Shown here piece by piece: positions 22,783-63,686 of a stretch of 64,000 nucleotides of DNA. Made by a program: the position numbers and the translations under genes. The notes beneath the pieces are model-generated. The model ran no database searches. It was not told the origin of the DNA and saw only the letters and a program-made list of their open reading frames with translations. Source of the DNA: Cyanophora paradoxa CCMP329 (Eukaryota > Plantae > Glaucophyta); contig QPMI01000104.1 of assembly GCA_004431415.1 (NCBI GenBank), positions 248,001 through 312,000 of the forward strand, written 5' to 3'. Position 1 is the stretch's first letter. Every line of letters starts with the position of its first letter.

Positions 22783-22825
<43 letters not shown>

Positions 22826-34083: not shown

Positions 34084-34518
34084 CTAGGAGAGGAGGGCGC
34101 CCCTGAGGGAGGCGGCGGGGTCGGGGGGCAGGCCGCAGAGGGGGCAGCGGGCCCCGCCGGGCCCCTCGAAGCACTCGCCGCAGAGGGCGAGGTGGCGGCA
34201 CGGCAGCGCCAGCACCGCCCGCGGCCGCGCCGCGCACGCGAGGCACGCCCGCGCCTCGGCGGCTCTCGCCTCGGCCAGCGCCGACGCGACGGCCGCAGTC
34301 CCCGCCGCGAGCCGCTCCTGCGCCCGCCGCAGCTCCGCCACCGACAGGCCGGCGAGGGCGGCGGGGCCGACGGGCGCGCTCTCCGCCAGCGCCGCCTCCA
34401 GCGCCTCCACCCGCGCCCGCAGCGCCCCTGCGAGACCGTCCGCGTCGGTCGGACGGGGAGGAAGGAAGGAGGGGGCGGAGGATGGGGGCTACCGCTTCAG
34501 CCGGGGAGTGCCGGCGGG

Positions 34519-34564
<46 letters not shown>

Positions 34565-37500
34565 GGGCAGCGACGGCCTCGCGGCGAGCGTGGAGGGCAT
34601 CGGAGGAGGCGGCAGCGGCCTGCGCAGCGGCAACCGCTGAGCGAGACGCCGAGAGCGGGCAGGGTGGGGCGGCGCCGGCGGGCCGACCTCGGCCCGGGCG
34701 GCCTCGGCGGCCTTCTCCGCCTGCGCCAGCCGCTTCCGCATCCCTCCGCCTCCGCCACCGCCTGCGCGGCGCTGTCAGAGGCCGGCGCGCGAAGGGACGG
34801 CAGCGGCGCACGGCTGCGAGGTCGGAGCGGGCGCGCGCCGCCTCCTCCCGCGCCTCCCGCGCCCCCCGCTCCGCGCTCTCCGACTCGATCCGCGCCACCT
34901 GTACCCCATCGGAAAGGGCGAGGGGGATGAAGCGCAGGGGGGTACCTCGGCATCGGAGGCGAGGCGAGACTGGGCGGCGGAGGAGGCGCGGAGGGCCACC
35001 GAGAGCCGCGCCGCCTCTGCCCGCGCCTGTACCCCGCGCCCGCCGGCTCGGCGGGAGAAGGGGAGGGGGAAAGGGGTACTGCACCGCTTCGAGGTCGGCC
35101 CGGAGCCGCGCCAGCTCCTCCCCTGTACCCCTCCTCAGAGCGGCGGGGGTGGGGATGGCAGGGGACGGGAGGGCGGGTACCGGCGAGGGGATCGACTCCC
35201 GGCCGAGGTACATCGGAGTGGTCGGGCCCCGGAGCCGCCACCGGAGCCCGGTACGAGCCCATCAGCTACGGACCGGTTCAAAAGTTGCACATAGGAGGGG
35301 CGTGGCGGGCGGAGTGCGGGCCTGATCCAAGGATACGTCGGCGTCGATGCTCTCTGTACCCCCCGCTGCCCCCGCCGCCCCGCGAGCCCGCGCCGCCCGC
35401 TCGAACAGCGCGTCCGCCTCCTGCCCCCTCCCAAGCGAGTAAAGGACTGGCGGTCGCCGCGTCAGTAAAGACTCAGAGCGGCTCGGGCCGGCGCCGGGGC
35501 GGACCGCGGGCGAGGGACTCGGCGACGGGCGCGCAGGAGGGGTGATCGGGCCCCGCCGCCGCCTCCTGCATCCCCAGCGCACGCTGTACGAGCCGCTCAG
35601 CTCGTCTGGCTCAGGTGAGCGCGGGCAAGAGAGGCGTACCCGGAGCAAGGGCGCGGCCTCCGCCGCGCGCCCCTGCTCGGCCAGCGTCGCCCCGAGGGCG
35701 GCCAGCGCCGAGACCAAACGGGGCCCCTCGGGAGCCGAACCTCCGTCCAGCACCTCCAACGCCCTCTGCGGCGCGGCGTGAGGGGGGTACTCCGAAAGAT
35801 TGTTGGGCTCAGGGGTACCCTGAAGAGGGCCTCGGCTTCGGAGAAGTCGCCCCGGTGGAAGTAGACCTCGCCCAGGCCGCAGGCGCAGCTCACCTGAGGA
35901 TCCTTTCGTTAGGGGCGCGCGCAAGGGCCGCGGGCGCTAGGGCGGGGGGGTACGGACCTGCGCGGCGCGGAGCTCCTCGGGACGCTCCTCGGAGGGGGCC
36001 GCGTCGAGGGCGGCCAGCGCGCGCTGCGGGGCCGTGAGCAGATCGGCGGGCGAAAGGGAGGGGGGTACGGCGGCCTCGCCTTCAGCAGCGCCTCGGCGGC
36101 GGCGTCGTTGCCCTGCGGCTGTAGGTGACGGCGAGGGCGCAGCAGGTCCCGATGGCGAGGGGGCTCAGCCGAACGCGGCCTCCTGCACCGCCAGCGCCCG
36201 CTGCGGATCGAGCGCAAGGTAAGATCTTAGGATGCTTCAAGAATGAATAATAGAATGCGGGCGCGCCTCTAGGAGGGCCTCCGCCTCGTCGTGGAGGCCG
36301 CGGCCAGCGCACGCGTCCGCCAGCCTCTGCAGGCTGCGCGCGGCGTGAGGGGAGGGGGGTGAGGGAAAGGGAGGGCGGGCGAGGCCGCGCCTGAAGGCGG
36401 TGCGTGGGTGCTGCGGCCCGTACTCCGCCTCGCTCGCAGCCAGCGCGCGCTGCGGCACGCAGCGCACATGAGCCGCTGCTAAGTTTCAGTGAGGCGGTGA
36501 GCGAGCGGCGCACTCGGAAGAGGGCCTCGGCCCTCGCCAGGTCGCCCCGCTGCATGCACTCCTGGCCCGCTGCGAAGGAGGTCGGCCAGCTGAGCGAGAC
36601 GGCAGAGAGGACGGGGCGCGGCCCGGCGGCCCGGCGGAGGCGCGCGGACCCGCTCGAGCTCGGCGCGGGCGGTCTCGGGTCCCACGGGCGTCGCCTCCTC
36701 CTCCAAAGGCGAGGCCGCCCGCCTTCCTCGCGGCGGGGGCCCTCCGGGCGGCTCGCGAGCTCCTCCAGCGCGCTCGCCAGCTGCCCGGTCGGGGTTCAGA
36801 AGAGGCTGCGGGGCACACGACAGAGTTCTCAACCGCACCTGCTCAGAGAACGACGCGCCGGAGCGCGGGACGGGGCCACGGGCGCCCCCGCGGCGCGGCG
36901 GGGGGTACGGGGCCGGAGGAGCCCGGGGCCGCGGCGCGGCCCGCCCGGAGCCGAGCGCGGGGCGGCCCTCGAGGGGACGCGGGGGAAACCACAGCGGCGG
37001 CGGCGCCGGCTGCCGAGGCGGAGGCGGCGGAGGCGGCGCCGGCGGCGCGGCGTCCCCAGGTCCCGGGCTTGCTCCCGCCGCCGCCGAAGACGCGGCGCGC
37101 ACCCGCGAGAGGGGCGACATCGGCGCCTGTGGAGCCTCTGGTGGCTCCGAGGAGGTGGAAGTGGAGGGGGGGGGCGGGGGCGAGGGCGCTGGGGAGGATG
37201 CCGGCGGCGCCGGCGAGGGAGCCGGAGAAGGAGGCGCGGCTGGCGGGGCCAGCGGATGCCCGAGAGGCCCACCTGGCGGGAGGCGGAGTCAGAGCCGATA
37301 AGAATATAAACCAGAGCTATGGGCTTTCGACCCTTTCCAGCTCAATGGCTGTACATGTATGTATAGCTAGCGCGCAGGCGGCCTTACCGAGTAGACCTCC
37401 TCGATGAAGGAGATCGCCTGCGACTGCCTGCGACGCCCCCACCCCCGTGCTCAGATGAGATCTGAGCCGGGCCGGGGCGGCCCGGACGCACCGGTAGGCC

Positions 37501-37634
37501 CGCCCCCGACGGCGAAGTGCTGGCTGGAGGCGGGCGCGGGGAGGGAGACCAGGGCCGCCTGGGAGCGGCGCGAGGGCGCGCCCCGCGCCTGCAGCGCCTG
37601 CCGAGTGCTCCCCCGGGCCCGTCTTTATGCACAT
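34084..37634 (-). CDS. TPR + coiled-coil + RING protein, copy 3; 5' end uncertain; homopolymer indels
   Basis: Intact RING exon 34084-34410 (CLACAARPRAVLALPCRHLALCGECFEGPGGARCPLC); TPR exons as in copy 2. Confidence 0.72.
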
Positions 37635-38252
37635 CTCAACTGTAGGGCCGCCCGAGGCTCAGGGGCCAGGGCCCCTTGGAGGGGCAGGGGGCTCAGCGGG
37701 GGTGGAGGGAGCGTGCCGAAGGACGGGGCCGCTTCTGACCTGACCGCGGGCCGCCCCCTCGGCAGCTGATGGGCCGCAACGATCGCGGGTACCGCATCGA
37801 GGCCCCCGAATCCGTCGCCGACAACCGCGAGGTCTGCCCGCGCGCCCGCCCCCGTGGCCGAGGCTGACGCCGCGCTGCTGGGCCGGGCCGGGCCGGGCCG
37901 GGCTAGGCTGGGATGGGCCGGGCTGGCTTGGCAAGGGCTAGCGGCTAGCTGCAGGGGGAACAGACGCCACCCGCGCCGCCTCCGAGGCCCGCCTGGGAAA
38001 TCTAAATCAAACCGCCTCCGTCGGCGCCGATTGCAACCGCGCCGCGGCAGACCTTCTTCCGCCCTCCTGCCGCACCCCATGGCCACCCCTCAACCCTCCG
38101 TCCACGGGCCACAGGCTCACAGCCCTCTCTACCCTCATGGCTCTACCCTCACGGCTCCGGATCCTGTCGGACGTGGTATCGCAGAGCAAATATATACTCA
38201 ATCCAGTTCAGCTATCGTATTCAAGCGATTGAACTCTAGTACTGGACCTAGG

Positions 38253-41200
38253 CTAAACGGCGATGTCGGTGGTGTATGCCTCGAGCTCGGTGTCGGCAAT
38301 CATCTGCAGGAATAAAATAAGGCAATTATTGCAAGCCGTGAGCGCGAGCTCACCAAAACCTCGGCGTCCACCTCTTCATCTATCTCCACGCAAACGGTAT
38401 CGATGCCAATTGCAACGTCGGCCTGAGCATCGATATCGATATCCTCGTCATCGACATACTGCGAGACAAGAATCCGCAAGCGAGATATGTGCATATTTGA
38501 ATCGACCGACTTGGGAAACAAATTCGCACACCGGTACCTTCAGTTCGGCCTCATCCACCAGTGCAACGGCATCGTCAAGCTGAGCAAATGTGCCTTCGTG
38601 CGCATGGAGATTTACGTGGTGAGTTTTTCGGATTCAATATTCGCGCATACACTCGATCTTTGAAGTTCGTGCTTACAATCGAGCTTGTTCGTGTATCCAG
38701 GAACAGTATTGCAATCGAGGCGGAGATTGGTCGACCTGCCTGGAGGCATCACTTCGAGAGACCTCAAAAGTAACAATTTTAATGCGAAGAGCAAGCCGAA
38801 TCTAACGCACGCGGCTTGCCCAAACTTCGACCTCGCTGAAGTTAATGTACTGATCGGTCCCTGCCGAATTCGAATCCGCTCAGTGGAAGATCGCCAAGTA
38901 CTGGTACTAGTTGAAATCGGCGTCGACGTCTAGCTCCGGTTTAAACACAACCGCCACACGCACCAGCTGACGACGTTTTCGTGATCGAACGGCGTCCCTG
39001 TCCGTATCGAATTCGAACAGAATTAAATTCGAAGTGTGTGAGTTTCTTCGAGCTCGACGTCATTGATCGTAAAATTAAAGCGGAATCCGAAATCCGAAAT
39101 CCGAAATCGCATGGAGGTCACTAGAGGTCAAAAAGTTAAGCGCACCGACAGTCCCCGACGACGGAAGCACGTGCTTTGTCAAGTTCGTGACAGTGGAATC
39201 GAACACGGGGCTGGCAATCGTTGGAGACGTGTAGACCTGCATCCGCCGAGCTCATGATCAGCTCGACTGGAATATATATAACAGCTGGAACAGAGTTCTT
39301 GCACCACTTTGCCATCATTCAAACCTGTCAGTTCGAAGTCAATGCGAACTCGACGTGAGCTTATAATTCCAATTAAGAGATCGAAGAGCGGAAAGACTCT
39401 CGATCGACGTTCGGACGCGAATGCAAATGCGCTTGCCTCGTAAACGATGTTCTTGAATCGGGTCCCAGCGTTACCTGCGTTGTCTCAAAATAAGTCCTGT
39501 GCGTGATTAGAAGAACGTCATTCCTGCACGTACCTGAGCGCTGCGCAATGCAAAATGCGGGCGAGCGTCATGATCAGTTGCACAAACATTGAATTCGAAC
39601 TTCTAAGCTTCTTGATTGATTTAACATCGCGCACGTTGTAAACGTCAATTTGTCCGACGTGTAGTCTTTCTGCAGTGCAAAGGGTCAGGCTTTATTCGAA
39701 CGCGGGGATGAAAACCGAAGTATTCGAAATGTGCGCTTACGCCAAGGTTGATGGTGATGGCAGGCTTCATATCGGAATCTGATGAATGATATCCGCGAGC
39801 ACTGCCAAAGTCCCAGACTTTCCTTTTCCATCTGTGCGCGTGCATCGCAAGCAGATCGCACTGCAACATAAGTTCACTCGCAAATATTGATATCATGCGC
39901 ACCGGTGGCCAGCGTACTGGGGTAGTCGGAGGTATCTGACGATAGGAAGGGATGCGCGTTCGGTCAAACAAATGTGCGCGTGCATTGGAGACCGTTGACG
40001 AAAGGAGCACATTGAGAGGTCGCATTTGTCGAAGCCCCAGAGCAACGTTCTCCAACCAGCGGACCTGCCGTTCCGATCGCGGCACGGTGAGTCAAGATCC
40101 GGATCCGGCAACGCGCACCGGCTCAAGGGACGATAATTGGCAATCGCACTTCATGGCGTTCACGTGGGTGTCCCATACCCAGACTGGCCTGCAACACTGG
40201 CTCAAATGCGATTGCGACCCTAGACAAATCAAAGGAATTGAAAACAGTCGAGCGCACGCGGCCTTGCCCCAAACTTCGACCTCGCCGAGGTTCAATATCT
40301 GATCGGTGCCTGCCGAATCCGCTCAATGCAAGATGGCAAAGTTGAACATATAGGCGTCGACAACTGCGGATAAAAACACAATACCGCCCCACGCACCAGC
40401 TGATGATGTTTTCGTAATTCGAACGGTGTCCCCTGTCCGTATGCGATTCGAACGAATTCCGAAATCGTATGGAGGTCACTAGAGGTCAAAAAGTTAAGCG
40501 CACCGACAGTCCCCGACGACGGAAGCACGTGCTTTGTCAAGTTCGTGACAGTGGCATCGTATGCCGGGCTGGCAATCGTTGGAGACGTGTAGACCTGCAT
40601 CCGCCCGAGCTCATGATCAGCTCGACTAGAATATATATAACATGTACAGCTGGAACAGAGTTCTCGCACCACTTTGCCATCATTCAAAACCTGTCAGTTC
40701 GAAGTCAATGCGAACTCGACGTGAGCTTATAATTCCAATTAAGAGATCGAAGAGCGGAAAGACTCTCGATCGACGTTCGGACGCGAATGCAAATGCGCTT
40801 GCCTCGTAAACAATGTTCTTGTATCGGGTCCCGAGGTTTTCTGCGTTGTCTCAAAATCATGCATGATATATAAGCAGAACGTCATTCCTGCACGTACCGT
40901 CCGTGCGCTGCGCAATGCAAAGTACAGGCGAGCGTCAGTTACACAAACACACAACTCTAGAGCTTCATTATTAATTTCAAGAGCGGGCACGTTGTAAACG
41001 TCGATTTCTCCGACAAGTAGTCTTTCTGCAGTGCAAATGAACAGGCCTTATAAATACGCCAGCGCAGGGAGGAAAAGGAAGATTTGAAACATGCACTTAC
41101 GCCAAGGTTAATGGAGATGACAGGCTTGCTGTCGGCGCCTGATGAATGATATCCATTGACTTTGGAGAAGTTCCCCTCCTTTCTTGTCCATCTGCGCAAG

Positions 41201-41863
41201 CGTGTCGCACCATGGCCAGTGGCACTGCAATGGCAAGGTCACTCGCGAAGATTGATATCGCGCGCACCGGTGGCCAGTTTGCTGGAATAGGCGGAGGTAT
41301 CTGGCGATAACAGAGGAACACGCGTACGCGTTTGGTCAGAGAAACTGTGCGTTGGAGAGCATTGTCGAAAGGAGCACATTCAGAGGTTGCAGTTGTCGAA
41401 GCCGCCAAAGCAACGTTCTCCCAGCCAGCGGACCTGCCGTTCCGATCGCGGCACGGTGAGGTTAGATCCGGATCCGGCAACGCCAGCATAAATATAAGGG
41501 ACGATGAATCGTACTTCATGGAGTTCACGTGGGGTGTCCAGGCGTCTGCGCCCGCGATCGGCGCCGCGGCCGTCGATGTCGACGTCTGGAGCACCTCGCA
41601 ACCATATCCATGCCTTCAGACTCCGTGAAACGCCAGGATTTAGCTCCAACAGGCGTGCAAGCGTTTGTTGCTTTCGCTATGTGTTGGCCATATTCGTCCC
41701 GAAAGGATCTTTCAACACTCCGTGTCCCCATTAAGAAGGGCGGTCCCGTGCAGTCGCGTTGGCAAGCAGGTAAACTCTGTGGCGCGAACGGCGTCATGCA
41801 TATGATCGTGATCAGCACGTACCAGCGCTCGAGCTTCATCGCAAAGCGCGCACTGCCGCCCAT
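38253..41863 (-). CDS. F-type lectin protein with two lectin domains, copy 3 (1-bp indels, probably consensus errors)
   Basis: Colinear with copy 2. Confidence 0.68.
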
Positions 41864-42288
41864 GATGACCTCAATCGAATCGGTTCTCGTTCGCGCAACA
41901 GCAGCAAGGATCCAGAAGACCCTGCCACAGTGCGCAGGGCCGTCGGTCGTCTATAGCAAGCACCAAAGTATGTATCCGCGGCGATTCCGCGCCCTCACCT
42001 AGGCCTAGGCCTTAAGAGATTGAACTTCGAACTTTGAAGTGAACAACCACAAACTTGCAAGTTGAAAGGCAAGAGCGACTCCGAGAACTCTGTCTCCGAC
42101 TCGGCGAGCTTGACTCAGGCTCGAGGCTCCGAAGAGCCCAGGCTAGCCGGCCCCCACCTCCGGGGCCGTGGCCCCACGGCCCTAGGAGCCGCGGCTAGCC
42201 GGCGGCGGCCTATTGGCAATACTAGCTATACCGTGTAACACAAAAATATGGCTGACAGATTTATGTCGTTATAGACTTCTAGTACGGT

Positions 42289-45701: not shown

Positions 45702-47444
45702 TCAGGTCGAGAGCGCGAAGCCGAAGACGTCGCTGCCGGGGGAAGGAGTCGGGGGGGGGGAGGGAGGGGAGGGGGGGGGGGGGGGGGGGGGGGGGCGGGA
45801 CGCGCACAGATTCTCGGCGACGCGGACGGGGCGGTAGGACTTGGGCACAACGGAGACGTGCGGCGAGCGCTACAGGTTCCACCGCAGTGGAACCTGCGAA
45901 AGGGGGGTACCCGGGGTGTCAGGCGGGTACGGGAGGCCGGGGCAGAATGCATGGATTAGAAAGGAAAAGTACTCGCCAGCGCGGGGCTCTTCCCGATCCG
46001 CTTTGCGATGTCCCCGATCTGTTTTTGGGGCAGCGTAAGGGGGGTACGGGTAGGAGGTAGGCGGGCGGGCGGGTAGGAGGGGGGTACGGCGCACGACGGG
46101 GTCGTCGGGCGGCTCGACGGCGTTCGGGTTGTCGGGTTGGGCGTCCAGGGGGAAGTACGCGGTGAGCTGAGGAGGGGGTACAGTCTCAGCGTGGAGGGCG
46201 AGCAGGGGGAGGGGTACGCCGCGGACGTGGATGCCGTGCTTGGTGCAGAAGTCCAGTAGCTTCGGCTGGGCGAGGTACGGGTGCAGCTCGACCTGGGCGA
46301 GGGGTACGAGGTGAGGGAGGGGGGTACGGGATTGATCGCGGCTCGGCCCCGGCACCTGGTTCACGGCCGGATTGATGCGGGCATACGAGAGGAGCTCCTC
46401 CAGGTCCCTTATCTTAAAGTTCGACACCCCGATCGTCTGCGGGGGGTACGCTCGCGCCTCAGGAAAGGGGGCTCGGGTCTCTCCGGAGGGGGTACGCGCG
46501 CCCTGACGAGGCCGGCGTCAAAGAGGGCCTCCATCGCCTCCCACGTCTCGCGGACGGGTACGGACGCCTTCCGCATGCGGTCGTTGCCGTCCTTGGGGAA
46601 CAGTCCCTCGCCCGCCGCGAACGCGATGGGCCTGCGCGGCGCGGCGGGGCGGGGCGCGCGCGTGGTCGGCCTGCGCGGCGGGGCGGGGCGGGCGGGCGGG
46701 CGAGCGAGCGGGCACCAGTGCATGAGCTACAGGTCGATGTACTTCAAGCCGAGCTCCTGCGCCGCGGTCGCTCGAGGCGCGGGACGTCCCGGCGGTCGGC
46801 CCCGGCCCCGATCGCACCTTGAGCGACCGCTCGCACGCGGGCCGCACCAGCGCGCGCTCGTGATCCGTGTTCCAGAGCTGCGCTCCGGGACCGGGCGTGA
46901 GCAACGCGCGAGAGGGAGCGCCGCCGCGGGCCGCGGGCGCGCCTTCGTGGTCACAAAGAGCTCCTCGCGCTTGATCGTCCCCTTCGGCTCGAGGGCCTCC
47001 GCCAGCACCTCGCCGACGTACGCTTCGGTCTGGTCTGCGCTCGCCCGCGCGCGGCCGGCGGGTCTCATTCAGCTCTCGCCAAGTGCGATCGGCGGAGCGG
47101 GAGGCGCACAGACTGCGGCCGTGTCGATGTGCTAACAGCACGCATCGAGCGCGGCGCGGACTGCGCTCTTCGTCAGCTCCTTCACATCCGGGCCCGCCCA
47201 AGTCCTAATGCGCAGGGTCAAAGATGCAGCGCGGGGGGCGGCGCGCGCGACGGGGAGCCAGGCTCAGCCAGCACCCGAGGCCGATGCGGGGGATGCTGGC
47301 GCCGACGCCGCTGGATAGCTTCGCACGGCTCGCACATCGCTTGCTTTCGCTTAAATACCTGTACCCCACTGCCGCGTGTCCCCCGGGTTCGTGCTGAGCT
47401 TCATGTGGTTCGGCCAGCTGTGACGCGCCGGTGCCTTCGACCAT
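45702..47444 (-). pseudogene. Aldo-keto reductase (AKR family) pseudogene, about 10 exons
   Basis: Spliced motifs [70 protein letters not shown] and VVPKS. In-frame TAG at 47132, 46727 and 45870, plus decayed conserved residues (YFPLD for YSPLG). Confidence 0.85.
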
Positions 47445-48042
47445 AGAGCTCTAGACGTACTCCAGGTGCGCTCATAGCCACCCGCCCGTGTTCGTTACGG
47501 CCGCCCGTCCAGCTGATCGCATCATTCGGTTTCGCTCGCGAGCAGTTTGGGGTTTCAGCGTGCTTGTAGTTGCGTTCAAAGAGCCCAGCTAACTCGGCGG
47601 CGCATTCCGTGTCCGGCGAGTCGTCATCGGCGCGGCGCCCCTGCAGCGGCCGCGGCTCGCGATCGGCCGGCACTGGGCGGGCTGCGCAGCCTCTCGGAAA
47701 CTCAATCCGAACGCTCTTGGAGGACATTTGGCTCGCCGCCCCGTCGACCGTGGGTCAGCAGCAGCGTGCAGGTCCGTGTCTGCATTCCGGCTTCAGGCGA
47801 GCAGGGTGCTTGGGTGGCTCTCTGTCTTTCGGATTAGCTACCAAAGATGCAGTCTAGCGATCGCTATCGTGTTCTCTAACGGGCGACTGACGCTGGACGT
47901 CGACGGTCTGTCTTCGTGCAAGTGCAGGCCTAGGGCTTGACTAGCTAGCTGCAGCCGCACCTGTGCCTAGCGTTCGAACCTCCTCTCAGCCTCACTGACG
48001 CACTCGCGGCCGTCCGATCGCAGCTGAAGAGCGCGGGAAGGC

Positions 48043-51000
48043 ATGGAGCTCGATCCCGCCCTTCCGGCGGCTGCTGTCGGCCTGGTCCTCGACCCCGCCA
48101 GCAACTCCGCCCCTTGGAGCAAGCTATACGCTCTGGACCAGCCTGTCCGTCTCTGTGTCAAGTGCGTCACTGCGCTGCGCTAACGCTAGCCGTTAGCGTC
48201 ACTCCCGACCCGTTGCTGCTCTAGTACCGGTACCCCCGTTGCGCGCCTACTTTCCTGTGTCACCACGATCGTCCACGAACCCCCCCCCCCCCCCTCAACA
48301 ACCCCCAACACCCGCCATATCATCCATTACACTACCTCAGACCCCCCCCCCCCCCCCCCCCTGCCACTCGCTTTCCTGTTCAGTGCACCTGATACCCCTA
48401 CACCGGCCTGGCCCTCCCTCGCCATCCCTCCCCCCCCCTTGTCGCCCCTCCCCCAGCAAACTTCCATCCCCCCCCCTCCCCCCCCCCCCCCACCCGTCCT
48501 TTTCCCATCCCACCCACCCTCGTGCTTCCCCCGTCCCTTCTCCCCTTTCCCGCCCCCCCCTCCCCCCCCCCCCTGCCACTCGCTTTCCTGTTCAGTGCAC
48601 CTGATACCCCTACACCGGCCTGGCCCTCCCTCGCCATCCCCCCCCTCCTCGCCCCTCCCTCCAGCAAACTTCCATCCCCCTGCCCCTCCCCCCGTCCTTT
48701 TCCCATCCCACCCACCCTCGTGCTTCCCCGTCCCTTCTCCCCTTTCCCGCCCCTGCGCCCCCCCCCCCCCCCCCCCCCAAGACACCCCCCCCACTCCGCC
48801 CCACCCCACTTCTTCCCCGCCTTGTCCAACCCCACCTCCTCCTCAGTGCAACTCGATTAGTGCTTTTCTCAAGTACCCCGGGATTTTGCGGCTCATGATC
48901 ATCAAGATGCCGTTGCCATACCGCTGCTGCTCCTTTGGCCCTTTCTCCGCATCCCCCCTCCCCCCCTTCCCCCCACTCCCTCCCGGAGTCGACGTCCCTG
49001 CTATTCCTTCAATTTGCCCCTCCCCCTCTCCCCTCCCCCTATCAACGCCTCACCCCCCCCCCCCGCCCCCCAGGTGCAATCATCCGCATGTGGGGTACGA
49101 CACCGTTGAGGATCTTTTCAGCGAGAGGATCTGTGGGCATAGCGACGTGCCCGAATACGTGCAGTCGGGGCCGCAGCTTCAGCAGTTGCTCGCCCAGAGG
49201 CGCGCGGGGGCCGGGTGGAAGCTGAGGTACGGCTGCGATGGCCTGCTGGTCCTGCGCAACGTCGGCACCCCGGGCGCGAGCGTCGGCGAGAGCGGCAGCC
49301 AGCACACCAGCGCTCCTAGCAGCGAGAGGCAGTATGTCCTCCTGGAGAAACTCGGCGACGGGTGCTCGGGCAGCGTCTTCCTGGCGGCCTCCCGCGGTCC
49401 CTCGCCTCTGGGCCCGGCCTTCATGCAGCTCCGAAAGGTCGCCGTCAAGCAGATGTCGATCTCTTCGAGTTCAAATTCGACGTGCGTGCTTGACACCGTT
49501 GCTTTTCTTACCTTTCTTTAATATTTACTTTGCAGTACTTCCGAGGATCGCGTATTCGAGCAAGCAGTGCTCGAGCAGCTCCGCCGCATCCGCCTGTGGA
49601 TGCTACCGACTTTTTGGGAAGAAATTGAGCCCGTCAGCCCCTCCCACCGGCTCTTTGCGATGACATACTTTGATGCCCCAAGGTGACGCTCTGAAATTAA
49701 CTATCGATCGTTGATCTCGAACCGAGTATTGAGCATCGACTCGGCATCATTCAGCATCGACGATCTCTTGACAGACAACCAAACCTTCCAACCCGAAGAG
49801 GTCACCTCGTTCCTCGAGCAGGTGAAGTTGTGCTGCTAAAGAGCATTTAAATTTGTCTATATACGTTTATTTATATAAATCTTTTGCTGCAGCTTGGACT
49901 GTTCACGCGCGCCCTAGATATGCATTATGTTCTAACCGCCCTAGATATGCATAACCTTAAAACCGTTCATCTGCTTCCTAAGCGTTTCATCGCCAGATGT
50001 GCATTCTCTTTTATCGGATCCACACGGAGTCGAACCTCATCCACTGCGACGTGTCGACATCAAATGTACTCGTCTGGAGAGCGCCTGATGGGATCAAGCT
50101 TCCTCAGTTCGTTTGATTGTTCTTCCTCAGTGCGTTCCTCAACTGGGATCAATTTTGCTGAAAGCTGTTGTACCTGCACGCAGGTTCATGCTGGCCGACT
50201 CTGCCAACAGCGTCCAGCGCGATGACAGAGCGCAAGGAAAGAGACTCGCGCCTTTCGAGATTGTGCACCTGCGCCCTTCCAAGCTTAAGCTTGCGAAAGT
50301 ACCCGCAATGCCAACTTTCATTTGCAGTTGCGCGGAAACTCTCAAACTGCTTCGGACATGTACGGGGTCGGGACTGTGGCTCTCCAGATGCTGACCGGCG
50401 TGCCCTCGGATGCCGCAAGCGTCACCAGGCTGCTCACGTTGTTTGCCCAGTTCTGCGCTGGTTGCCTACGCAGCTGGCATCCTGATCCTGGAGACCGTCA
50501 AATTCTGGCGCGAATTGAGCAAATTCCGAAGCAGCTACGCCGCGTCTTGGCTGATCTTCTTCAGGTTCGCACTCATGGTTTTAAGCAGATGCATCGTTCG
50601 CTTACGTATACCTCATCGATATCTAGTAGCTCTCGTTAGCATTTTAATACAATCTACTCTGATTTGAAATCATGTCGTAGGAGTCCGAGGTCCACCGGAC
50701 CGCGTCGGCAGTGGCGCTGTGGAACAGTATGCATCGCGAAGATCTACGCGAGGATGGCCTCTGGAATGTTGGAGGTTGGCAGTTATGTATACTTGAGAAT
50801 ATTGAGATTTTATCTGTTTGATTGAAGGTTTCGGAATCAACGCCAGATTTCTTTGATGACTCGGACTCAATCTGGGTTCGGCAGCAGGCTGAAGCCATCC
50901 GTGAGGCTCTTATCCGTGATGGCAGGCTCCAGGGCGCAATCGATGAGATTGAGCACCTAAACTCCAGCTCCAGCGTCGCCCATGGCCAACCATTGGTGGG

Positions 51001-54000
51001 CATTCGAGTTGTTATCAGCAGTGGACACGACTACATTGATCGTCACCAAATCGTAGAGGCGATACGATGTATCGTTGGAGGGGTATGTGGTGAAACTGCA
51101 TTCAATAATTCCTGAGTCATATTATTCGCAATGTTAAACTCCATATATTCAGGGAGCTTTTGGACCTGAATTCCCGTATCCGGAAGCGGAAGCATTGCCT
51201 GGCAGCACGATCGTCGATTTCAAGCTGCCCAAGACGCTTGCAGATGCACTCGCGCTGAAGTGCACCGAAAGCAGCATTAAAAAGGGCCTGCAATACTCTG
51301 GCTTCATACTGATAAAGATCCAGGGACATCCTGACATCCAAATCACCGAGAAGGGCATCGGTCCGTGCTTCGTTTATTTAATTATGTACTGTCTGGTTTT
51401 CATTCGTTCTTGCATCGGTTGCCTGCAGACGTTCCTGCCGCGAAGAATCCGCTCGTGTTCTGGGGCTCCGCCTTTGTCCCCGCTGGCTTCCAGATGCGAA
51501 TGCTCAGCGCGTTTGAGTTCTGGCAGCTGCAACCATCAGTGTGGACTGATTCGAGTGCCGCGCGGGCCGAGCCGCAGCGCATTAATGTATACTTCACGTA
51601 TCTCTCGGGACTGCCCGTCAAACATCTCCGCCGATCTTTTGTGGTGCATTGATATTCCGAGCTTGAAAGCTTACTTGCAATTGCATTGAAGCCGATTCCT
51701 CGCATATGCATGCTCACAAGCGCTTCGATTGCAGGCTGTGCGAGCCGCGGATGAGAGTCAGAACTTCGATCCCGAATTTGATCCGTCCACTGCCTCTCGG
51801 GATGTTATCATGTCGCAACTGCGCGATGGGTACAAGAAAGCTGGCATGGATCCGAATTCACGTGCGCCGATTCTCGGCTGGAAGATTCAATGATTGATGG
51901 CTACCGCTGAAACGCCTTGACCATGCCTCAGGCATCGACACGTTTCGTTTGCAGACGCGAGACCAGTTGGCACAGTTGTACAAGCAGTGTGGAGGAGAAA
52001 GACTTACGAATTTCGGGAAAATCACAAAGCGAGATCTCACAAATCGCGTGATTGACGTCTTGTTCGGCTCAAGATCTGGAACCATTGAGGTCTGAATCAA
52101 TATCGCTGTGTACTTATACATCATGTTTTGAATCTCCCTGCAGCAGCCGCGTGCAGGAGATCTAGAGGCTTCTCCTAGCCCGAGGCCTTCTGGACTTCCG
52201 AACCGAGCGAAGTCGAAGTCAATGTTGAGCCAGCTTATCCGGAAAGCGTTGGTTCAGGTTGGAGACACGCTTGAGCTGCGAGGGTGCACGTGCATGGTAG
52301 GGCTCAGAATTCATTATAGCTGAGTCATACTTTCGCAGATTTGTCTAAATTTAACTTCCGCAGGTCCTCGAGCATGGGCGCGTCAAATTTGTGGATAAGG
52401 ACGGTGCGACTCACACATCGACTGGAGCAGCTTGGGCCAAGTCGGTCCTCAAGGAAGCCGGCGCCAAAACCGTACCCCACACAGCCCTGAAGCAGGCGTT
52501 TGTGTACCCCGCCGCTGGAGGCGCGCCCATTTCTCTCGCTTCTCTGTACCAGGCGACATCGGCTCAAGACAAGATGTTGGAGATCAGCGGCTCGAGCTCA
52601 GTTCCGGCAGCTATAGCCATGGACGCTGAGGGGTCTCTGCAGGAAGTTATTCGTCCAGCGCAGGGTGTGTGGTGTTTGTTTGCATCAATATTCATCCATC
52701 TGTTTGCACCTCAAAGGGGATGCAGCATTTGACGTCAAGGAGGAACGGATGGTTGTGAAAGAAGATACCGCAGCTGCAGCCGAGCCCAAGCCCGAGGAGT
52801 TTGAAACAGAGACGGATGATGATGAGGAGATCGATCTGAACAACCCTTTGGTGCGCGCGCTCATATGCTTGCGTCTATCTGTCGGTTCTCTTTACGTTCT
52901 CTTTTACATGTGTTAATATATAAAACCCTTCTTGACGACTGCATTTCGCAGAGTGCAGCAGTGCGCCTCATGATTCCGCTGGGAAAACTCGACAAGGAGG
53001 CTCGATTGCGCCTGCTTGAGCGGCTCAAGGGTGCATGCGGAAAACAGGTTTGCACGCTCGCCGACCTGTGCAATGAGGAGGCCTTGGGGGTCGCGTTCGA
53101 CGAAATGGTGTCAGCCGGGTCGATGCTGAGCGTGCTCTCGCAGGCGGTCTGGTGCGAAATGACACATAATCGCAATTACTTATATATATATATAAATGCA
53201 TGATAACCGATCGCTACGTTTCAGGGGCGGCTCGGTGAGCGAGGTGGCTCTAGAGGAAATCGTCCTATCTAAGCTAAGGATATGTGATGGAGACTTGGAG
53301 AAGCTCCTCATTGGATTTGGAGCCCAAGCAAAGCAGCTTATTGCAGAATTCGGGATTTCAACTGGAAGTATGGGTGCCAAAACATCCGTGCGCCTCCTGT
53401 TGTTCTGGGGTGTTGGGTAGATTGCTTGTCATGAAGTCCGCACATAATCTCTCCTCGCTCACCGTTGCAGACAATGCGAGGCTATCTGTCTGAAGTCCTG
53501 AGAGCAATCTCTGACTCCGGCAAGAGACTTACAACCACTTTGTTTGATGACGTGGCGGCAACAATTCTGGCGCACACGCTGCAATTGGATATCCATGTAT
53601 TCTCCCGGGTCCGTTCTCTTCTTACCCACTGTACATGTCTTGCTTTCCAACTTTTTCTGCTCTTAAAGACGGTCACAGAATGCAAATCGCGCAGTCTCCG
53701 TGAAGAGCTTTGAGACTGGAACAGAAGGATTGAAAATTCTCAGCAATCGTCATGTGGTCATCTTGGCACAGAAGAGGCTGAAAAACCGTCTCGAGTACGC
53801 TCTCTATCGGGCAAAGAATGTTTTCCAGGATGGTGCGCATGAAGTTTTTGTTTGACTTGAATTCGACTTTTCAGAACTCAAAATGCATTCCACAGATGAG
53901 TTTGTTGATAGGGTCTCGATAAGCACTATGGAATCTCACGCGACCGCAGCGCATGTTCAGAAAGAAGACTTTAAATGGGGTGCGCTTGCACCTTCAAAAT

Positions 54001-57000
54001 TTCCTCTAAATAGTCGACTGATCAGACACTCAGATGTAAAGCAAGGTCCGCGCCTGGATCACAGTAATCCAGATGATCCTGCAACGCTGGAGGTATGTAA
54101 TCCTTGCAATCTTTGTCGTCCAACACGTTAGTGAATTGAAGAAATCCGACCGCTCAGACCCGTATCTCTGAAGATAGAACGCAATTTGTGCTGGTTCGCA
54201 TAAGTAACCGAACGGGAGTGGAAGAGATCATTGGAACGCAGCCAGTTCTCCGTAAGCGGCAGAAAAAGATGACGACGGCTTTGGATGCTGCATGCATCCG
54301 GGACTACTTGCGTGAACTGCTCCAACTTGATTCTCAAAGCATTGGTGTGCAACGCCTATCAAAGCTTCATCTGCAATGCTAATCATTTGTTCAGGGCAAG
54401 AGAGAGTGTTTGACCTCGTCCAGAAGTTGAAGGACGAGGCGATGGATGTTTTCTCGTGTGGAAAAGGCACTGGTGCAGAGAATTACGTCGAAAACGCCGA
54501 GAATATTCGAGAGATTGTGCGTTCCCGTTTTGATGCAAGCGATCGTTGACATCGTGTATTGATGCGAGCGGCAGTTGACGAGCGGCATGGCAGGCCCCAA
54601 CTCACCCATTGCCGAACTCATGCTGCTTCGCGTTTTCTTGGTGGGTTACACGAAGTCTGGTATGCTCTCGCGCTCAATGCTGTGAACTCTCGAATTATGC
54701 CTAGCGTGACTTTTACGAAGGCAAATCAACGTTGCTGTCGAGCCTTCTGTACAGCGGCATGCCTTCCGCGGAAAAGTATTCTCGCTTGATTGGCAGAGTC
54801 AAAGAAGTTTTGGGGGAACGCATCTGCTGGCACCCCGCCACATCTGACGTGCGCATGCGCTTCAATCTAGATATAGAGATCGCAAGAGATGATACAACCG
54901 CAGTTTTATGGCTTCGTGAGTGGCGCGACGCTGCCGGATGACCATGAGCAGAAGATGAGAGCGCTGGAGGAAGTCGGCTTCAAGGCAGCGGCTGCAGCGG
55001 CGGCAGCCAGTATATCTATTAGAAGTGCAGACGTTGATGGCGATTCCAGCTTCATGTGGCAGCTCATGCAGAAGCTCGAGGAGCGGGCCGGACCCGCATT
55101 GAAGGACAAGTTCGTCCGCGGCGTTCTTCTTCCCGCAATGGACGTGAACGCAACAACAAGGTGGGGCACCTTGCGATCTCAACGTAATCGTTGATCGTGA
55201 TCTGACTTCACTTAATTTGCTTGAACAGTGTGTCCGTCTTCGCCAAGCTGTCCCCCTTCCCGTACTGCATCGTCTCCTTCATCACCGAGGCCGAGCACGA
55301 GAGAATCAAGGTGGAGGCGTTGGAAGCGCTAGACAACATTCAGCAAAAGAAGAAGGCGAATACGAAAGGGCGCGGGAAGCGCTCCATGTACGACGCCGAA
55401 GATTTAGATGAAGCCGAGGGAGAGCCCGGATCTGCTGATCAACATGAGGAGAAAGTTCTGCATGCTCTCTCGATGGTGGGCAAGGAGGGTCTCGTCAACG
55501 CACAGGGCAAAGGCTACGACCAGATCACGTGAGTGGAACTTTCGCTACGTTATAGTACATCTTCAGACCTTCCTCCTTACTGCTTGATAAGGCCTGCCGA
55601 TCTGGAGTTCGACGAAGAGATCGCCGAGATGAAGCGCCTCTACGGACGCAACCTGATCTATGTTCCAGGTGATTTGGTCGCTCCGTCTGGCACTGAACGA
55701 CGGTGTCTGACGATGTCTGACTTTTTTTATTGTGCAGGGACCGAGAGTCGGGATGACGCCCTGTTCAGCCTCCAGAAGACGCTCGGCCTCTTCACCACGA
55801 ACGGGATTCGCAGCTGCTGGGGTCTCGTCAAGAGCGCCGAGTTTGGAGTGCCAAGCAAAGCATGCGACGGTTTTCTCTTCGTCAGTTCCACCCTTTGCCC
55901 GAAATTTCGGCCCCTCTGACGCAATTATGTTTTTCTCAGTGCGATTGCGTTGGCTCTAGCAGGATTGATACCGTCAGAAGGGCAGCTGCGGCGCATTCGG
56001 AGTCAGGCGGAGAGATCGACGTCCTGCTTCACGTTGTGGTCCATCAGAACACGCCGTCAGATGTCTTCCCCGATCTGAATGGCCCTATCCGCGCTCTCAT
56101 CCTGAATCCTGAAGACCACGCGGTGAGGCTACATCGCAGCCCGCAACCCCTAATATAACGTCCGTGCATGCACTGCGGCAGGTCGTGTTGGCCTACGATG
56201 CTCGCAACGGGAAATCGTCGAAGGGAGAGATCTCCGAAGAATACGCGAAGACGCTGGAGTCCGAGGTGGAGCAGCGCGTCATAAACACCGAGTGGCGACC
56301 GCGGGTCTCCGAAATGATTCCAGATGTTGAAGAAGGCGCCACAGACAAAGACGCCCCCCACATCGACGAGGAAGCAATGTGCGAGCCCCTATGATCACCT
56401 TAATTGGACATGCGAGCCTACGTATACGTAGTTTTAATGCAAATGGTTCCACAGAATGAAACGTTTTTTCTTCGTCCCTTACTGCGCCGCACCATCATTC
56501 ATGAAGGCGCAAGCAAAGGGCACTGGAGAGGATCCGGATGACAAATTGGAGAAGCCCAGGCTTGCTGCGCTCTGCCAGAAACTTCGAGATCTGCATGCCG
56601 ACATCGCCCGGCGCCGCGTGCGCAAACGATTTCAAGACGAAATATAATCCAATGTCATTCAGAGCTTTCGCCTCCTCTATCACGTGCGTTCTGAACATTC
56701 CATTGCATCTGCACCTTGCACATTTAATTAATTTGCGATCCATTTAACTTAAGAAGTTCACATGACACTGCAGAGCATCACACTGCAGACGCAGCCCTTC
56801 TCCGCAGAAGACCGCCGGCGAATCGATCAAGAACTCCAGCAGGCAGAGAGGCGGCTGCGCGAGACAGTGCAAGCGTTAAAGAATTTGGGCTTCCGGGAGC
56901 TCTACGACGCGATCGAGCTCTGCGAGGAGCGCATCCGTTCCCTCGTCCTCGGTGCCTACTCGCGGCTCGAGGTCTGCAATCGTGATTTTTTAAATAAGAG

Positions 57001-58305
57001 AAAGGTTTGCTTATCGCTATCTCCCTTTAAATTATCACTACCTTCTCTCTCAAACTCGGAACTTCTCTCACATGTCCATACGTGCCGAATGCAGAAACTT
57101 CTGGAGAAGTGCAGCGAAAAGAGCACCGGAGTGTTGGAGAGGATCTTCAAGGAGTGCAAGGAGCCGTACTTGTCCAAGGGCTCCCGCAGGCTGCTGCAGC
57201 TCCTCAAGGCTGAAGAGCCCGAGAACGCGCCCCTCTTCGCGTGCCTGTTCGGCGATTTCCTGAGCAAGCTTCCGACTAGCCTCGTGAGCCAGCTGAAGGC
57301 ACAGTACGCCAAGGTGCTGTCGAAGGGGACGGAGGCGGACCCACGGCCGGCCAGCATCCAGGCCCTCCTGGAGAAGCGGCTGGCGCTTGACAAGCTTGAG
57401 TACCGGGGGCAGAAGGATGATTCGCCCCTCGTCAAGAAAATGGCATCGCGTATTCTGAAAGACACAAAGAAGTTCGCTCAATCCTTTTTCGTCTACTCTT
57501 CTTTGAGCTGATCTAATGGCTTTGCACCTTAGGACGCTGCAGGAGTCCATCAACCGGTACTTCGACATGGAGCTCCCGTCCAAGCTCGACAAGTTCATTG
57601 GCACGACACTGAAGGAGGCGTTCATTGGCACACTAAGGGCGGAGCTTGAGTACTACCTTAAGAAAGCGATGGTAATTAAATATTGCAAACAATTACAACG
57701 ACCAAGCTTCTTCTGGCTTTAATTTCCCTCGAGCTCGCTCTAATCATGATCCTCGCTGTGCAGAAGAAGAAGTTGAACTCGGAGCGATACAATGCGCTTC
57801 TGCAGGCCATGGCGGATCCCTGGCCGGGCAGCGAGAACACGAGCTACGAGAAGTCCATCATCAACGTGTGCGACAAGGTCAGCGATGTTGTGTACGGTTG
57901 TGTACGGTCGCACGATGTCCGGTTAGAAGCTTAACTTGTCTCTACAGGTTGAAGGCGAGATCGCGAAGCAGTTCGGCAAGTTCAAAACCAGTATCCCTGA
58001 AGGATTCCGCGATATTGTTCTCGCTCGGGTTGAGGAGCTCGCGAACACGCGAAAGAACCCCATCGCGGACGTGAACTCGGACATCGGCGCCAAGCGCAAG
58101 GTGATCATGGAGAGGCAGTGGCAGCACCTGATCAAGCTCCTTAATGTTGTTCTCGAGACTGCACAGAAGCATGATCTTGTGACGTACGTGAACATCGCTT
58201 TTTTGCATCCGATCGCGAGACGGCCGCAGTTGATTAATACGGCATCACAGGATCCACGATCCTGTTTACGACGCCTTCCTCGACCTCCGAGCGCAGGGCA
58301 CCTGA
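48043..58305 (+). CDS. ~2,200-aa multidomain protein: atypical protein kinase, SAP/HeH-like, RAMA-like, inactive OTU-like, dynamin-like GTPase and helical C-terminus; about 40 exons
   Basis: A manual exon walk with GT-AG introns keeps one frame from ATG 48043 to TGA 58305, with one weak donor near 50768. Kinase motifs LGDGCSGSV, VAVK, IHCDVSTSN, LADSA and SDMYGVG. GTPase G1 VFLVGYTKSGKSTLL, G2-region LLPAMDVNATT and G3 FLFCDCVG. Confidence 0.8.
48355..48780 (+). repeat. Two ~212-bp C-rich tandem repeats in the ~910-bp first intron of the kinase-GTPase gene
   Basis: ctgccactcgctttcctgttcagtgcacctgatacccc at 48361 and 48573; long C runs (G-quadruplex-prone on the minus strand). Confidence 0.85.
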
Positions 58306-59226
58306 TCATGAGCCCGATTCCTAACTCAACGTTTGACGTTTACTGGTCTAGCTAAGATATCAATCTAGGATTCGAACAATTTTGACGATTATTTCGAGTC
58401 TCGGATGCGTCTCTACAAACTGTTTGCTTCTCTTGTATGTTTAACGCTTGGCTGCTTTCGGCTGCATCTCAGATATCGATGTAATTATAATATTGATATT
58501 TGATATTGCGATATCTAGATATTGAGTAGAAGAGATGTTTAGACCCCCTAATGTTTAGCTTGCCGAAGCGGATAATGTTTAGAAAACCACACGGCCCTGG
58601 GACGCGCGCGGGCCGCGGCCGGGCGCGTCACGGCGTATATACGTAGCGCCGTGGCGGGGCAGGGTCGTTACAGAGCCGGGGCTTATAATTATAGCTAGCA
58701 TTATAGCTCAGCGGCTAGAGCGCAGTGAAGCGAAGAAGGATTTCGATTAAAATATTCGTCGAGCGTGATGCGAATTAGTGGGGAAGCGGGGGCGGGTCGC
58801 GGGGCGATGCTCCGGTATACGTAATCATGAGGGGCAGAGCGGATCGATATCATGCGAAGGGCGGGCTTCAAATTCGCACTCCGGTCCTTTTCAAGGCGTC
58901 TAGGGGCGGTGAAGGTCGACGAAATCACAGCCCCTCAGATTTTGGATACGTATACCGGACCGCGCCTAGGAGGAGGCCTAGCTTTATATATAGGCCTAGG
59001 AGCTGGGGGAGGCCTGAAAGGCCTAGGGTCGCAGGGGCTGATGCAGCACGTAATTGCAGCGGCCGAAGCTAATGAACACGCGGCAGCCTGGGGCGAACAT
59101 GTACAGGCTCCAGATTCTAGCTAGAAGCGAATTCGAAGAAGCACATTCTACGAATCTATGAATCCATCGAAAATCTAGGAAAAGATCTATAGCTAGATAT
59201 AATTGGCTGTCATCATGATCAGGACA

Positions 59227-62459: not shown

Positions 62460-63686
62460 ATGGCGGCTCACGACGCCGCTCTCACAATCCAGGTCCGCAC
62501 CGCCCAGCGCCTTCGGGGCCTTTGCCGCGTCCGGTTGACGCTTCTGAGCAATCGCGCACGCCGCAGATCGAAGGGGATACGCATCCACTCGGCGATGTCC
62601 CTGTCCGCGACGGTGACACGCTTGCTACTGTGAGAAAGGTCCGCCTGCTTTGCGCGGCCAGCGGTGCTCTCGAAAGATGTGCCAGCCGCGCACCGCCGCG
62701 GCGGCGCTCGCGGCCGCAGCGCCGAATCTAATCGCGCCTCCGCAGGCGGTATGGACAGGATTCACGAAGCTCCCGGCTGGCTTCGACTTTCGGTTCTTGA
62801 TTCGCATCTCTGGGCGTTTGACTGCGGTTGGCATCAAGGATGAGAAGCAGATCTCGGCGAAGCAGCTGCTGCCCGGGGTTCGCGGCCCTTCCGCAGGCCC
62901 TTCTCTCGACTAGGACCGACGAGCGCGGCACGCGCAGGTTCTCATTCGTCGGGCTGACCTCTGCGCTGCGGGCCTCCAGGCTCATCCAGGTCCGCCCCCG
63001 CCCCGCGGAGGCTGCCGCCCGCTCGCGGCTGACCGCCCGCGCGCCAGCGCCGGCGCCGGTCGCGCACGCGCACGACGCCGCCGCAGCCGCCGCCGACGCG
63101 TCGGGCATGCCGCGCGTGTTCGTCACCTACGCGGCCGAGGACCTCGCCGCCGCCACGCGCGTCTGCGAGTACCTCTCCACGGCGGGCTACACCTGCAAGT
63201 GCGCCCGCCGCCCTCCCGCCCCCTTCCTTCCGACCGCCTGATTTATCCTCGCAGGATGACGGTGCCGAACGCGCGGTACCGCTTCGAGAAGGCGATGCGC
63301 GGCAGCGACCTGGTCGTCCTCTTCGCCTCGCCCTTCTCCGGCAAGTCCGAGCACGTCCTCGAGGAGGTCTTCTACGCCCGCGAGCTCCGCAAGGTCCGCA
63401 CGCGCGCGGCTCCCGGGCTCCGGGGCCGGCGTCGACGGTACCCCTCCCTCAGATGGTCTTCACGGCGTTCCTGGCGCCCCAGAAGCAGTGCGGGCTCCAC
63501 CCCGTCGTCCGCAAGGCCGTCAGCCCTATCTACAGGCGCGCCCCTCCCCTCCAGGAAGAGAGAAGGCCGAGCGGCTGACGCCCGGCGCGCAGCGTGGACT
63601 TCCCCGAGGGGCAGGAGCTGGAGGCGCCGCCCTTTCTGCTCGCCTGCAAGCGCCTCGCCAACGGCATGAAGCTCGCCCTCCGATGA
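62460..63686 (+). CDS. ~250-aa protein with an N-terminal ubiquitin-like beta-grasp region and a C-terminal TIR (TIR_2-like) domain; 8 exons
   Basis: Spliced TIR region RVFVTYAAEDLAAATRVCEYLSTAGYTCK-MTVPNARYRFEKAMRGSDLVVLFASPFSGKSEHVLEEVFYARELRK-MVFTAFL. N-terminus LTIQIEGDTHPLGDVPVRDGDTLATVRKAVW...FRFL. All introns phase-compatible; TGA at 63684-63686. Confidence 0.8.

What the first reader, a model, noticed from the sequence alone, without database searches (positions are those of the whole stretch)
48043..58305. Giant kinase - SAP - RAMA - pseudo-OTU - dynamin-like GTPase fusion: candidate DNA-sensing defence protein
Seen: one spliced frame of about 40 exons with kinase motifs (49330-50720), GTPase G1 GYTKSGKST (split by an intron at ~54660), LLPAMDVNATT and CWGLVKSAEFGVPSKACDGFLFCDCVG, then a long helical region. 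Established: dynamin-superfamily GTPases (Mx, GBPs, bacterial DLPs) act in antiviral defence, and a WPL(I/V)K...D.PG segment is typical of SLIP-GC/NUGGC-like members. Inference: I know of no described protein with this architecture. It would couple nucleic-acid recognition, ubiquitin binding, phosphorylation and GTP-driven polymerisation in one chain.
Basis: partly seen in the sequence, partly recalled or inferred. Interest (0 to 1): 0.9.

Follow-up and report, generated by a model that had tools for sequence, protein, structure and literature searches.

The report
Algal DNA-binding dynamin-like GTPase fusion
The alga Cyanophora paradoxa has a small gene family that joins a DNA-binding RAMA domain to a dynamin-like GTPase, a pairing I found described nowhere; this copy also carries a kinase at the front but has an early stop codon that probably cuts off its tail, and any role in defence is untested.

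Summary
The gene is real but probably broken. It has 39 exons (48043-58305, 2,213 codons) in Cyanophora paradoxa. One 7,286-nt spliced contig, with a second study's contig agreeing, joins kinase to GTPase in frame; the doubted junction is 50774^50847. The frame is not open: TAA at 56645 (codon 1818) falls where the intact sister protein g576 aligns straight through, and contig lengths suggest the RNA keeps it. The product is probably 1,817 aa, missing about 395 aa of helical tail. RAMA is confirmed by fold in the sister (Z 10.7 CcrM, 10.5 MPND). The GTPase is dynamin-like (G1-G3 intact, G4 altered; ESM Atlas Dynamin_N 0.94). The kinase rests on motifs and weak hits. SAP, pseudo-OTU and NUGGC membership stayed unconfirmed. 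Two relatives were found, both in C. paradoxa and annotated without a kinase; none elsewhere. Best reading: a nuclear DNA-binding large GTPase family, perhaps acting on foreign DNA (40%). The scan's first readers noted RAMA-GTPase genes before on other pieces of this genome (s1-528639, s1-525373).

The parts
47707..48042 (+). 5' UTR (if unspliced; start inferred from contig offset of 336 nt)
48043..58305 (+). Whole coding span, 39 exons, 2,213 codons, one internal stop
48043..48161 (+). Exon 1, followed by a 912-nt C-rich intron (48162-49073)
   Evidence: loose end of X1 and X2 contigs matches the end of exon 1
49333..50683 (+). Divergent protein-kinase domain (aa ~127-390, exons 2-8): G-loop 49354, VAVK 49438, HCDxxxxN 50042, DSA in place of DFG 50197, APFE, SDMYG
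   Evidence: motifs; weak exon hits, all to kinases: RIO1 E 0.026, PrkT 0.083, FGFR4/CDK5 0.7-2, Ser/Thr kinase 0.84, one plant kinase-like chain 0.47
50774..50847 (+). In-frame splice joining the kinase to the rest (intron 50775-50846)
   Evidence: record coordinates of X1 and X2 contigs
50993..51341 (+). Unassigned alpha/beta segment (aa ~470-562) with a Gly-Ser turn (51201); TRADD-N-like by eye only
   Evidence: sequence; uS motif described in PMC8195603; no Pfam hit
51934..52068 (+). Short helical segment, candidate HeH/SAP-like; conserved in P0003 (22/44), absent from P0006
   Evidence: no family or PDB hit
52222..52570 (+). RAMA DNA-binding domain (aa ~762-855, exons 14-15)
   Evidence: fold of the sister region matches CcrM and MPND RAMA; exon 15 is 51/78 identical to it
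52749..52841 (+). Acidic linker after RAMA
   Evidence: sequence; also in P0003 and P0006; MPND has an acidic region after its RAMA (PMC9963953)
53090..53813 (+). Conserved alpha+beta domain (aa ~975-1140), candidate inactive OTU-like fold with no Cys or His at the expected places
   Evidence: conserved in all three paralogues; OTU identity not recovered
54251..54268 (+). Basic cluster RKRQKK, candidate nuclear localisation signal; matched by PRKRQR in P0003
54611..56518 (+). Dynamin-like P-loop GTPase domain (aa ~1310-1775): G1 54644-54731, G2 NATT 55147, CWGLVK 55815, G3 DCVG 55943, inferred G4 AYD 56191, G5-like 56471
56645..56647 (+). Premature TAA, codon 1818, inside a helix that both paralogues encode
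56618..56662 (+). Possible cryptic 45-nt in-frame intron over the stop; splice sites score like real ones but contig lengths argue it is retained
56648..58305 (+). Helical stalk-like tail after the stop (~395 codons, exons 33-39), still open and 53-71% identical to P0003
58582..58586 (+). Probable poly(A) site

Best explanation
This is one copy of a small Cyanophora-specific family of soluble, probably nuclear, DNA-binding large GTPases with the core RAMA - acidic linker - conserved alpha+beta domain - dynamin-like G domain - helical stalk. Mechanism (inferred, not shown): RAMA grips double-stranded DNA by the backbone, several molecules gather on the DNA, their G domains pair and hydrolyse GTP, and the stalks assemble them into a polymer or clamp on the DNA. 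The most likely target is foreign or mobile DNA (giant-virus or transposon DNA). This copy has gained an N-terminal kinase that would signal on assembly, but it has a recent nonsense codon, so it most likely makes a 1,817-aa kinase-RAMA-GTPase without most of the stalk; the intact family function would rest on g576 and g7068. Shown: the gene, the splicing, RAMA fold, P-loop motifs, the stop in the assembly, the paralogues. Inferred: stop retained in RNA (about 75%), dynamin superfamily (85%), nuclear DNA binding (70%), defence role (45%).
For: Single spliced contig from kinase to GTPase. RAMA fold Z 10.7/10.5, rmsd 1.8-2.2 A over 83 residues, far above the next hit at 5.6; Atlas RAMA clusters. 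All ten best Atlas feature hits with a family share the Dynamin_N family or clan, top score 0.94. G1, G2 Thr and G3 DxxG are conserved in three paralogues at 33-64% identity. No transmembrane segment in this copy or P0003; basic clusters in all three. RAMA binds dsDNA without sequence or clear 6mA preference in MPND (PMC9963953). Defence context: fast divergence and lineage restriction, variable N-terminal add-ons, antiviral dynamin-superfamily members (PMC11789081; bioRxiv 2022.12.12.520048), giant-virus insertions in C. paradoxa (PMC12344493), a TIR gene 5 kb downstream. Stop: assembly is Illumina-corrected and probably haploid (PMC6704402), with no mismatch to four runs over 6 kb; contig ends fit a poly(A) site only if the 45 nt are kept.
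Against: No functional data at all. No significant HMM hit to Dynamin_N; only the P-loop scores (MMR_HSR1 E 0.0006-0.04). The GTPase model was unusable (pLDDT 34). G4 lacks the Lys, so GTP preference is not certain. Known eukaryotic RAMA fusions are chromatin proteins (PMC4738411), which favours a housekeeping reading. RAMA was folded in the sister, not in this copy.
Confidence: 0.4

Rival explanations
1. The family is a chromatin or genome-maintenance factor, not a defence system: RAMA plus acidic linker binds nucleosomes as in MPND, the next domain may read ubiquitinated histones, and the GTPase acts like the nuclear SLIP-GC/NUGGC GTPase.
For: RAMA followed by an acidic region and a DUB-type domain is the MPND layout (PMC9963953); eukaryotic RAMA partners are chromatin domains (PMC4738411); NUGGC is described as a nuclear GTPase aiding genome stability (PMC12107551); the gene is expressed in many unchallenged cultures.
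Against: Housekeeping chromatin factors are usually conserved across species; no relative was found outside C. paradoxa; one of three copies is broken; OTU and NUGGC identity were not recovered.
Confidence: 0.3
2. This copy is a decaying duplicate: the mRNA is made but the protein is degraded or inert, and the kinase fusion has no function.
For: Premature stop with six introns downstream; run X8 uses a splice form at 52283^52339 that puts stops inside RAMA; an intact sister lies on the same contig; the public annotation covers only a 527-aa piece.
Against: Only one lesion in 2,213 codons; the tail after the stop is still open with GC3 0.79; kinase Lys, Asp, Asn, Asp and all G motifs are kept; spliced contigs in several studies.
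Confidence: 0.2
3. The full-length protein is made after all (2,198 aa through a 45-nt intron, or 2,213 aa if the TAA is an assembly error or strain allele).
For: The 45-nt segment has donor and acceptor scores at or above the median of the real introns and a GC content in the lowest 1% of exon windows; only one comparable pair occurs in 6.4 kb of exons. The site was not read directly.
Against: It would be the shortest intron in the gene (next is 50 nt); the segment aligns as protein with both paralogues; contig ends fit only the retained form; the assembly is polished.
Confidence: 0.22
4. Kinase and RAMA-GTPase are mainly separate or overlapping transcripts; a shorter kinase-less mRNA starting near exon 12 is the main product.
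For: In run X8 the contig from exon 12 onward has depth 29 against 2-5 upstream; both paralogues are annotated without a kinase; contigs from short reads cannot prove one molecule.
Against: X1 and X2 have unbroken in-frame spliced contigs through the whole region; 3' bias and contig breaks explain X8; the tool warns that contig depth cannot rank parts of a gene.
Confidence: 0.12

Closest known systems
MPND / MYSM1-type RAMA-JAB proteins and CcrM RAMA
   Same: RAMA fold (Z 10.5-10.7), an acidic stretch after it, possibly a DUB-fold neighbour
   Different: Here RAMA is fused to a large GTPase and, in this copy, a kinase; no JAB/MPN or methylase domain; no such fusion in the list of PMC4738411 or in the paper search
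SLIP-GC/NUGGC and fungal Dynamin_N + DUF7605 proteins
   Same: Soluble large GTPase with long insert between G2 and G3, a W-x-L-V-K segment before G3 (resemblance from memory), helical tail, probable nuclear location; Atlas hits to ascomycete clusters (0.94, 0.90)
   Different: No Dynamin_N or DUF7605 HMM hit; G4 lacks Lys; large N-terminal DNA-binding region; bacterial clusters score equally well
Bacterial dynamin-like proteins, including antiphage Eleos (LeoA/LeoBC) and DynA
   Same: Dynamin-like G domain plus helical trunk; Atlas 0.94; weak LeoBC P-loop hit (E 0.03)
   Different: No membrane-inserting segment in this copy or P0003; single eukaryotic gene with DNA-binding domain; no detectable bacterial homologue
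Mx proteins and GBPs
   Same: Concept of a target-binding, self-assembling antiviral large GTPase
   Different: No sequence match, no GED or Dynamin_M hit; not a member

Membership tests
RAMA domain (PF18755) | Fold shared with CcrM and MPND RAMA | tested here: met
   on sister P0003 residues ~109-204; this copy 51/78 identical in exon 15
RAMA domain (PF18755) | Pfam HMM score | tested here: not met
   low sequence conservation is known for this fold (PMC9963953)
RAMA domain (PF18755) | dsDNA or 6mA binding | not testable with these tools
   needs EMSA
Dynamin superfamily | G1 GxxxxGKS/T, G2 Thr, G3 DxxG in order | tested here: met
   invariant in three paralogues
Dynamin superfamily | G4 (N/T)KxD | tested here: inconclusive
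   inferred position reads A-Y/F-D: Asp kept, Lys absent; placement not confirmed by a structure
Dynamin superfamily | Large G domain with insert, followed by helical stalk | tested here: inconclusive
   about 465-aa G region and 430-aa helical tail in paralogues; Atlas features Dynamin_N 0.94; HMM no hit; model unusable; tail cut by the stop in this copy
Dynamin superfamily | Assembly-stimulated GTP hydrolysis | not testable with these tools
   bench assay
SLIP-GC/NUGGC subfamily | DUF7605-type helical domain | tested here: not met
   no DUF7605 hit on P0003:1100-1527 or P0006 at E<=10; only a rank-28 Atlas cluster carries it
SLIP-GC/NUGGC subfamily | Grouping with NUGGC in a tree or profile-profile match | not tested
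Protein kinase (ePK-like) | G-loop, VAIK Lys, catalytic-loop Asp and Asn, APE, alphaF Asp in order | tested here: met
   weak kinase hits in exons 2, 5, 7
Protein kinase (ePK-like) | DFG motif and HRDxKxxN | tested here: inconclusive
   DSA and HCDVSTSN: metal and catalytic Asp kept, Phe, Gly, Arg, Lys changed; activity uncertain
OTU deubiquitinase fold | Catalytic Cys and His | tested here: not met
   neither at the places suggested by the pattern, in any paralogue
OTU deubiquitinase fold | Profile or fold match to OTU | tested here: inconclusive
   no hit; model there is mostly pLDDT 35-50, though it ends helix plus four strands
SAP/HeH domain | Profile match | tested here: inconclusive
   no hit with exon, paralogue or 2-sequence profile; not folded
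TRADD-N superfamily | RRM-like fold with uS motif between strands 2 and 3 | tested here: inconclusive
   Gly-Ser turn at 51201 fits PMC8195603; no Pfam hit exon by exon; not folded

The most novel reading that the evidence does not exclude
An undescribed eukaryotic DNA-sensing large GTPase system: a RAMA domain that nucleates dynamin-like assembly on foreign DNA in the nucleus, with exchangeable N-terminal signalling modules (kinase, TRADD-N-like adaptor) and an inactive DUB-fold ubiquitin reader. It would be a dynamin-like protein whose target is DNA rather than membrane, in an algal lineage with no known innate immune mechanism.
Probability: 0.25. Interest if true: 0.85.

Novelty: new variant of a known kind. 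Interest (0 to 1): 0.58.

Why it matters
Dynamin-like GTPases are known mainly as membrane machines, with some antiviral members that bind capsids or pathogens. A family that carries its own DNA-binding RAMA domain would give a direct, testable case of DNA-triggered large-GTPase assembly, and could hint at what nuclear NUGGC-type GTPases do. It also extends the known RAMA partners beyond chromatin and restriction-modification proteins. The public annotation hides this gene (a 527-aa fragment). For bench work the intact sisters g576 and g7068 are the better objects, because this copy is probably truncated.

Tried and rejected
Exon-by-exon Pfam, NCBIfam and PADLOC scans gave only weak kinase and P-loop hits. 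Homologue searches with P0003 regions and the three-sequence profile returned self only or nothing; these are limited by query length and shared words. Viral, metagenome and bacterial genome scans and plasmid tblastn found no relative. P0002, P0004, P0005 and P0007 are repeat artefacts and were dropped. The AlphaFold model of the GTPase (pLDDT 34) and its Foldseek result were discarded. PDB profile searches for GTPase, SAP and OTU regions gave nothing meaningful (the 4D2 hit is a designed repeat protein). The look-up of encoding contigs had no record for P0001 or P0003, so the sister's DNA and any kinase upstream of it could not be read. The 50828 acceptor and the 40-exon open model were considered and set aside. 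The two original SLIP-GC papers were not held. My first notebook entry called the X8 splice form 'in frame'; one search shows it contains stops.
Full report
Gene structure. Three-frame translation and splice signals give a + strand gene from ATG 48043 to TGA 58303-58305. Public runs hold the stretch at about 0.6 of its words, the share expected for spliced RNA (0.586). Laying three of them and one DNA-type run on 49071-55070 showed GT..AG joints in the RNA-type contigs and none in the DNA run. Run X2 has one 7,286-nt contig that runs from exon 1 through the kinase, RAMA region and G1-G2 of the GTPase; X1, from another study, agrees. Record offsets are constant against the model, and 26 joints were counted, matching 25 model introns plus one alternative. 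Short-read contigs do not prove a single molecule.

The frame is interrupted. Exon 33 holds TAA at 56645-56647, codon 1818 of 2,213. An open 40-exon model needs a 45-nt intron at 56618-56662. Its splice sites score like real ones and it is AT-rich. But the sister protein P0003 aligns straight through those 15 codons, as does P0006, so the segment is coding in origin. Contig lengths give an indirect test: if the 45 nt are kept, X8's contig ends inside the only run of four A's in the 3' region (58583-58586) and X2's ends 31 nt after G58582, as a poly(A) tail would in a 31-mer assembly; if they are spliced out, both ends fall in a GC-rich stretch with no feature. The assembly was corrected with Illumina reads and the genome is probably haploid (PMC6704402), and no run differed from it over 6 kb. 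I put about 75% on the RNA carrying the stop. The site itself was not read, because the reads tool allowed one call.

Relatives. A search of 1.84 billion representatives with the frame 55533-55916 gave three real hits, all Cyanophora paradoxa proteins in EukProt: g570 (P0001, a 527-aa annotated piece of this gene), g576 on the same contig (P0003, 1,527 aa, 64% identical in the GTPase) and g7068 (P0006, 1,535 aa, 33%). P0003 matches exons 13-39 in order and none of exons 1-11. P0003 and P0006 align over about 1,250 aa at 26%. So the conserved core is RAMA to helical tail. Whether g576 also has an unannotated kinase, as an earlier unchecked note implies (s1-509578), lies outside the window. No relative was found in viral, metagenome, bacterial or plasmid collections or by length-limited homologue searches.

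Domains. RAMA: the model of P0003:92-490 had moderate confidence over residues 20-112, and this part matched CcrM (Z 10.7) and MPND (Z 10.5, rmsd 1.8 A, 83 residues), with the next hit at 5.6; Foldseek and the Atlas agree. GTPase: G1, the G2 Thr and G3 DxxG are invariant in the three proteins; the inferred G4 keeps Asp but not Lys. HMMs see only the P-loop, but ESM Atlas features place P0001 with Dynamin_N clusters, fungal and bacterial equally at 0.94. The subfamily is therefore open. Kinase: the motif series is complete and in order, with DSA for DFG; exon-level hits are weak but mostly to kinases. SAP/HeH and OTU-like segments are conserved between paralogues (the first only in P0003) but gave no profile or fold match; the OTU-like model is low-confidence, so this neither supports nor excludes it. 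A segment at aa 470-562 has a Gly-Ser turn like the TRADD-N uS motif (PMC8195603), untested. There is no transmembrane stretch in this copy or P0003, and all three have basic clusters.

Mechanism. From established behaviour of the parts (MPND RAMA binds dsDNA regardless of sequence and of 6mA, PMC9963953; dynamin-superfamily G domains pair and assemble through stalks, own knowledge), the family most likely gathers on nuclear DNA and turns that into GTP-driven assembly. Defence is favoured by lineage restriction, fast divergence, swapped N-terminal modules, antiviral precedent (PMC11789081; bioRxiv 2022.12.12.520048) and giant-virus insertions in this genome (PMC12344493). A chromatin role is favoured by the known RAMA partners (PMC4738411) and by constitutive expression. 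Nothing here measures function. This copy would give a kinase-RAMA-GTPase without most of its stalk; it may be a signalling variant, a dominant-negative regulator or a dying duplicate. Run X8 also shows a splice form with stops inside RAMA.

Novelty. RAMA-dynamin fusions are absent from the published RAMA architecture list and from the paper search (open-access library only). I rate it a new variant of a known kind, interest 0.58: the architecture is real and unusual, but two of five named domains are unconfirmed, function is untested and this copy is probably truncated.

Method notes. As the operators required, all searches used single exons or open frames by reference, or database proteins by id; no search was run with the joined spliced protein, so profile and fold tests of the whole kinase and of this copy's own multi-exon domains were left out. 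The joined model was built only inside scripts to check the frame, motif positions and hydropathy, with X at the stop.

Noticed in passing
window 52283-52364: Run X8 (2024) uses a different splice (52283^52339) from X1/X2 (52296^52364); it adds TAA codons at 52346 and 52352 inside RAMA.
   Followed up: partly
window 51735-55070 versus 49071-51642: In run X8 the contig from exon 12 onward is about six times deeper than the upstream pieces; could be 3' bias or a shorter kinase-less transcript.
   Followed up: no
window 50993-51341: Unassigned alpha/beta segment between kinase and RAMA with a Gly-Ser turn; TRADD-N-like by eye, no Pfam hit.
   Followed up: partly
window 9954-45578: About 12-kb unit present in roughly three tandem copies (20979-30602 vs 32714-42288 at 99.3%), with internal repeats; one copy holds a Cys-rich open frame at 29048-30184 on the - strand.
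   Followed up: no
window 5089-9034: 1.9-kb inverted repeat (96.6%) whose arms contain a ~165-nt tandem unit.
   Followed up: no
window 63095-63420 (+): Spliced TIR-domain gene 5 kb downstream; two exons each hit TIR_2 at E about 0.005.
   Followed up: partly
window 46700-47446 (-): Upstream divergent gene whose frames look like an aldo-keto reductase by eye; the one piece scanned had no Pfam hit.
   Followed up: no
window 48342-48773 and 49905-49955: Intron 1 contains a ~230-nt direct duplication among C runs; intron 4 is lengthened by a short tandem duplication.
   Followed up: no
EukProt g570 (P0001): The public annotation covers only residues ~1233-1753 of this gene and ends by reading into intron 32, so the architecture is invisible in proteome searches.
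   Followed up: yes
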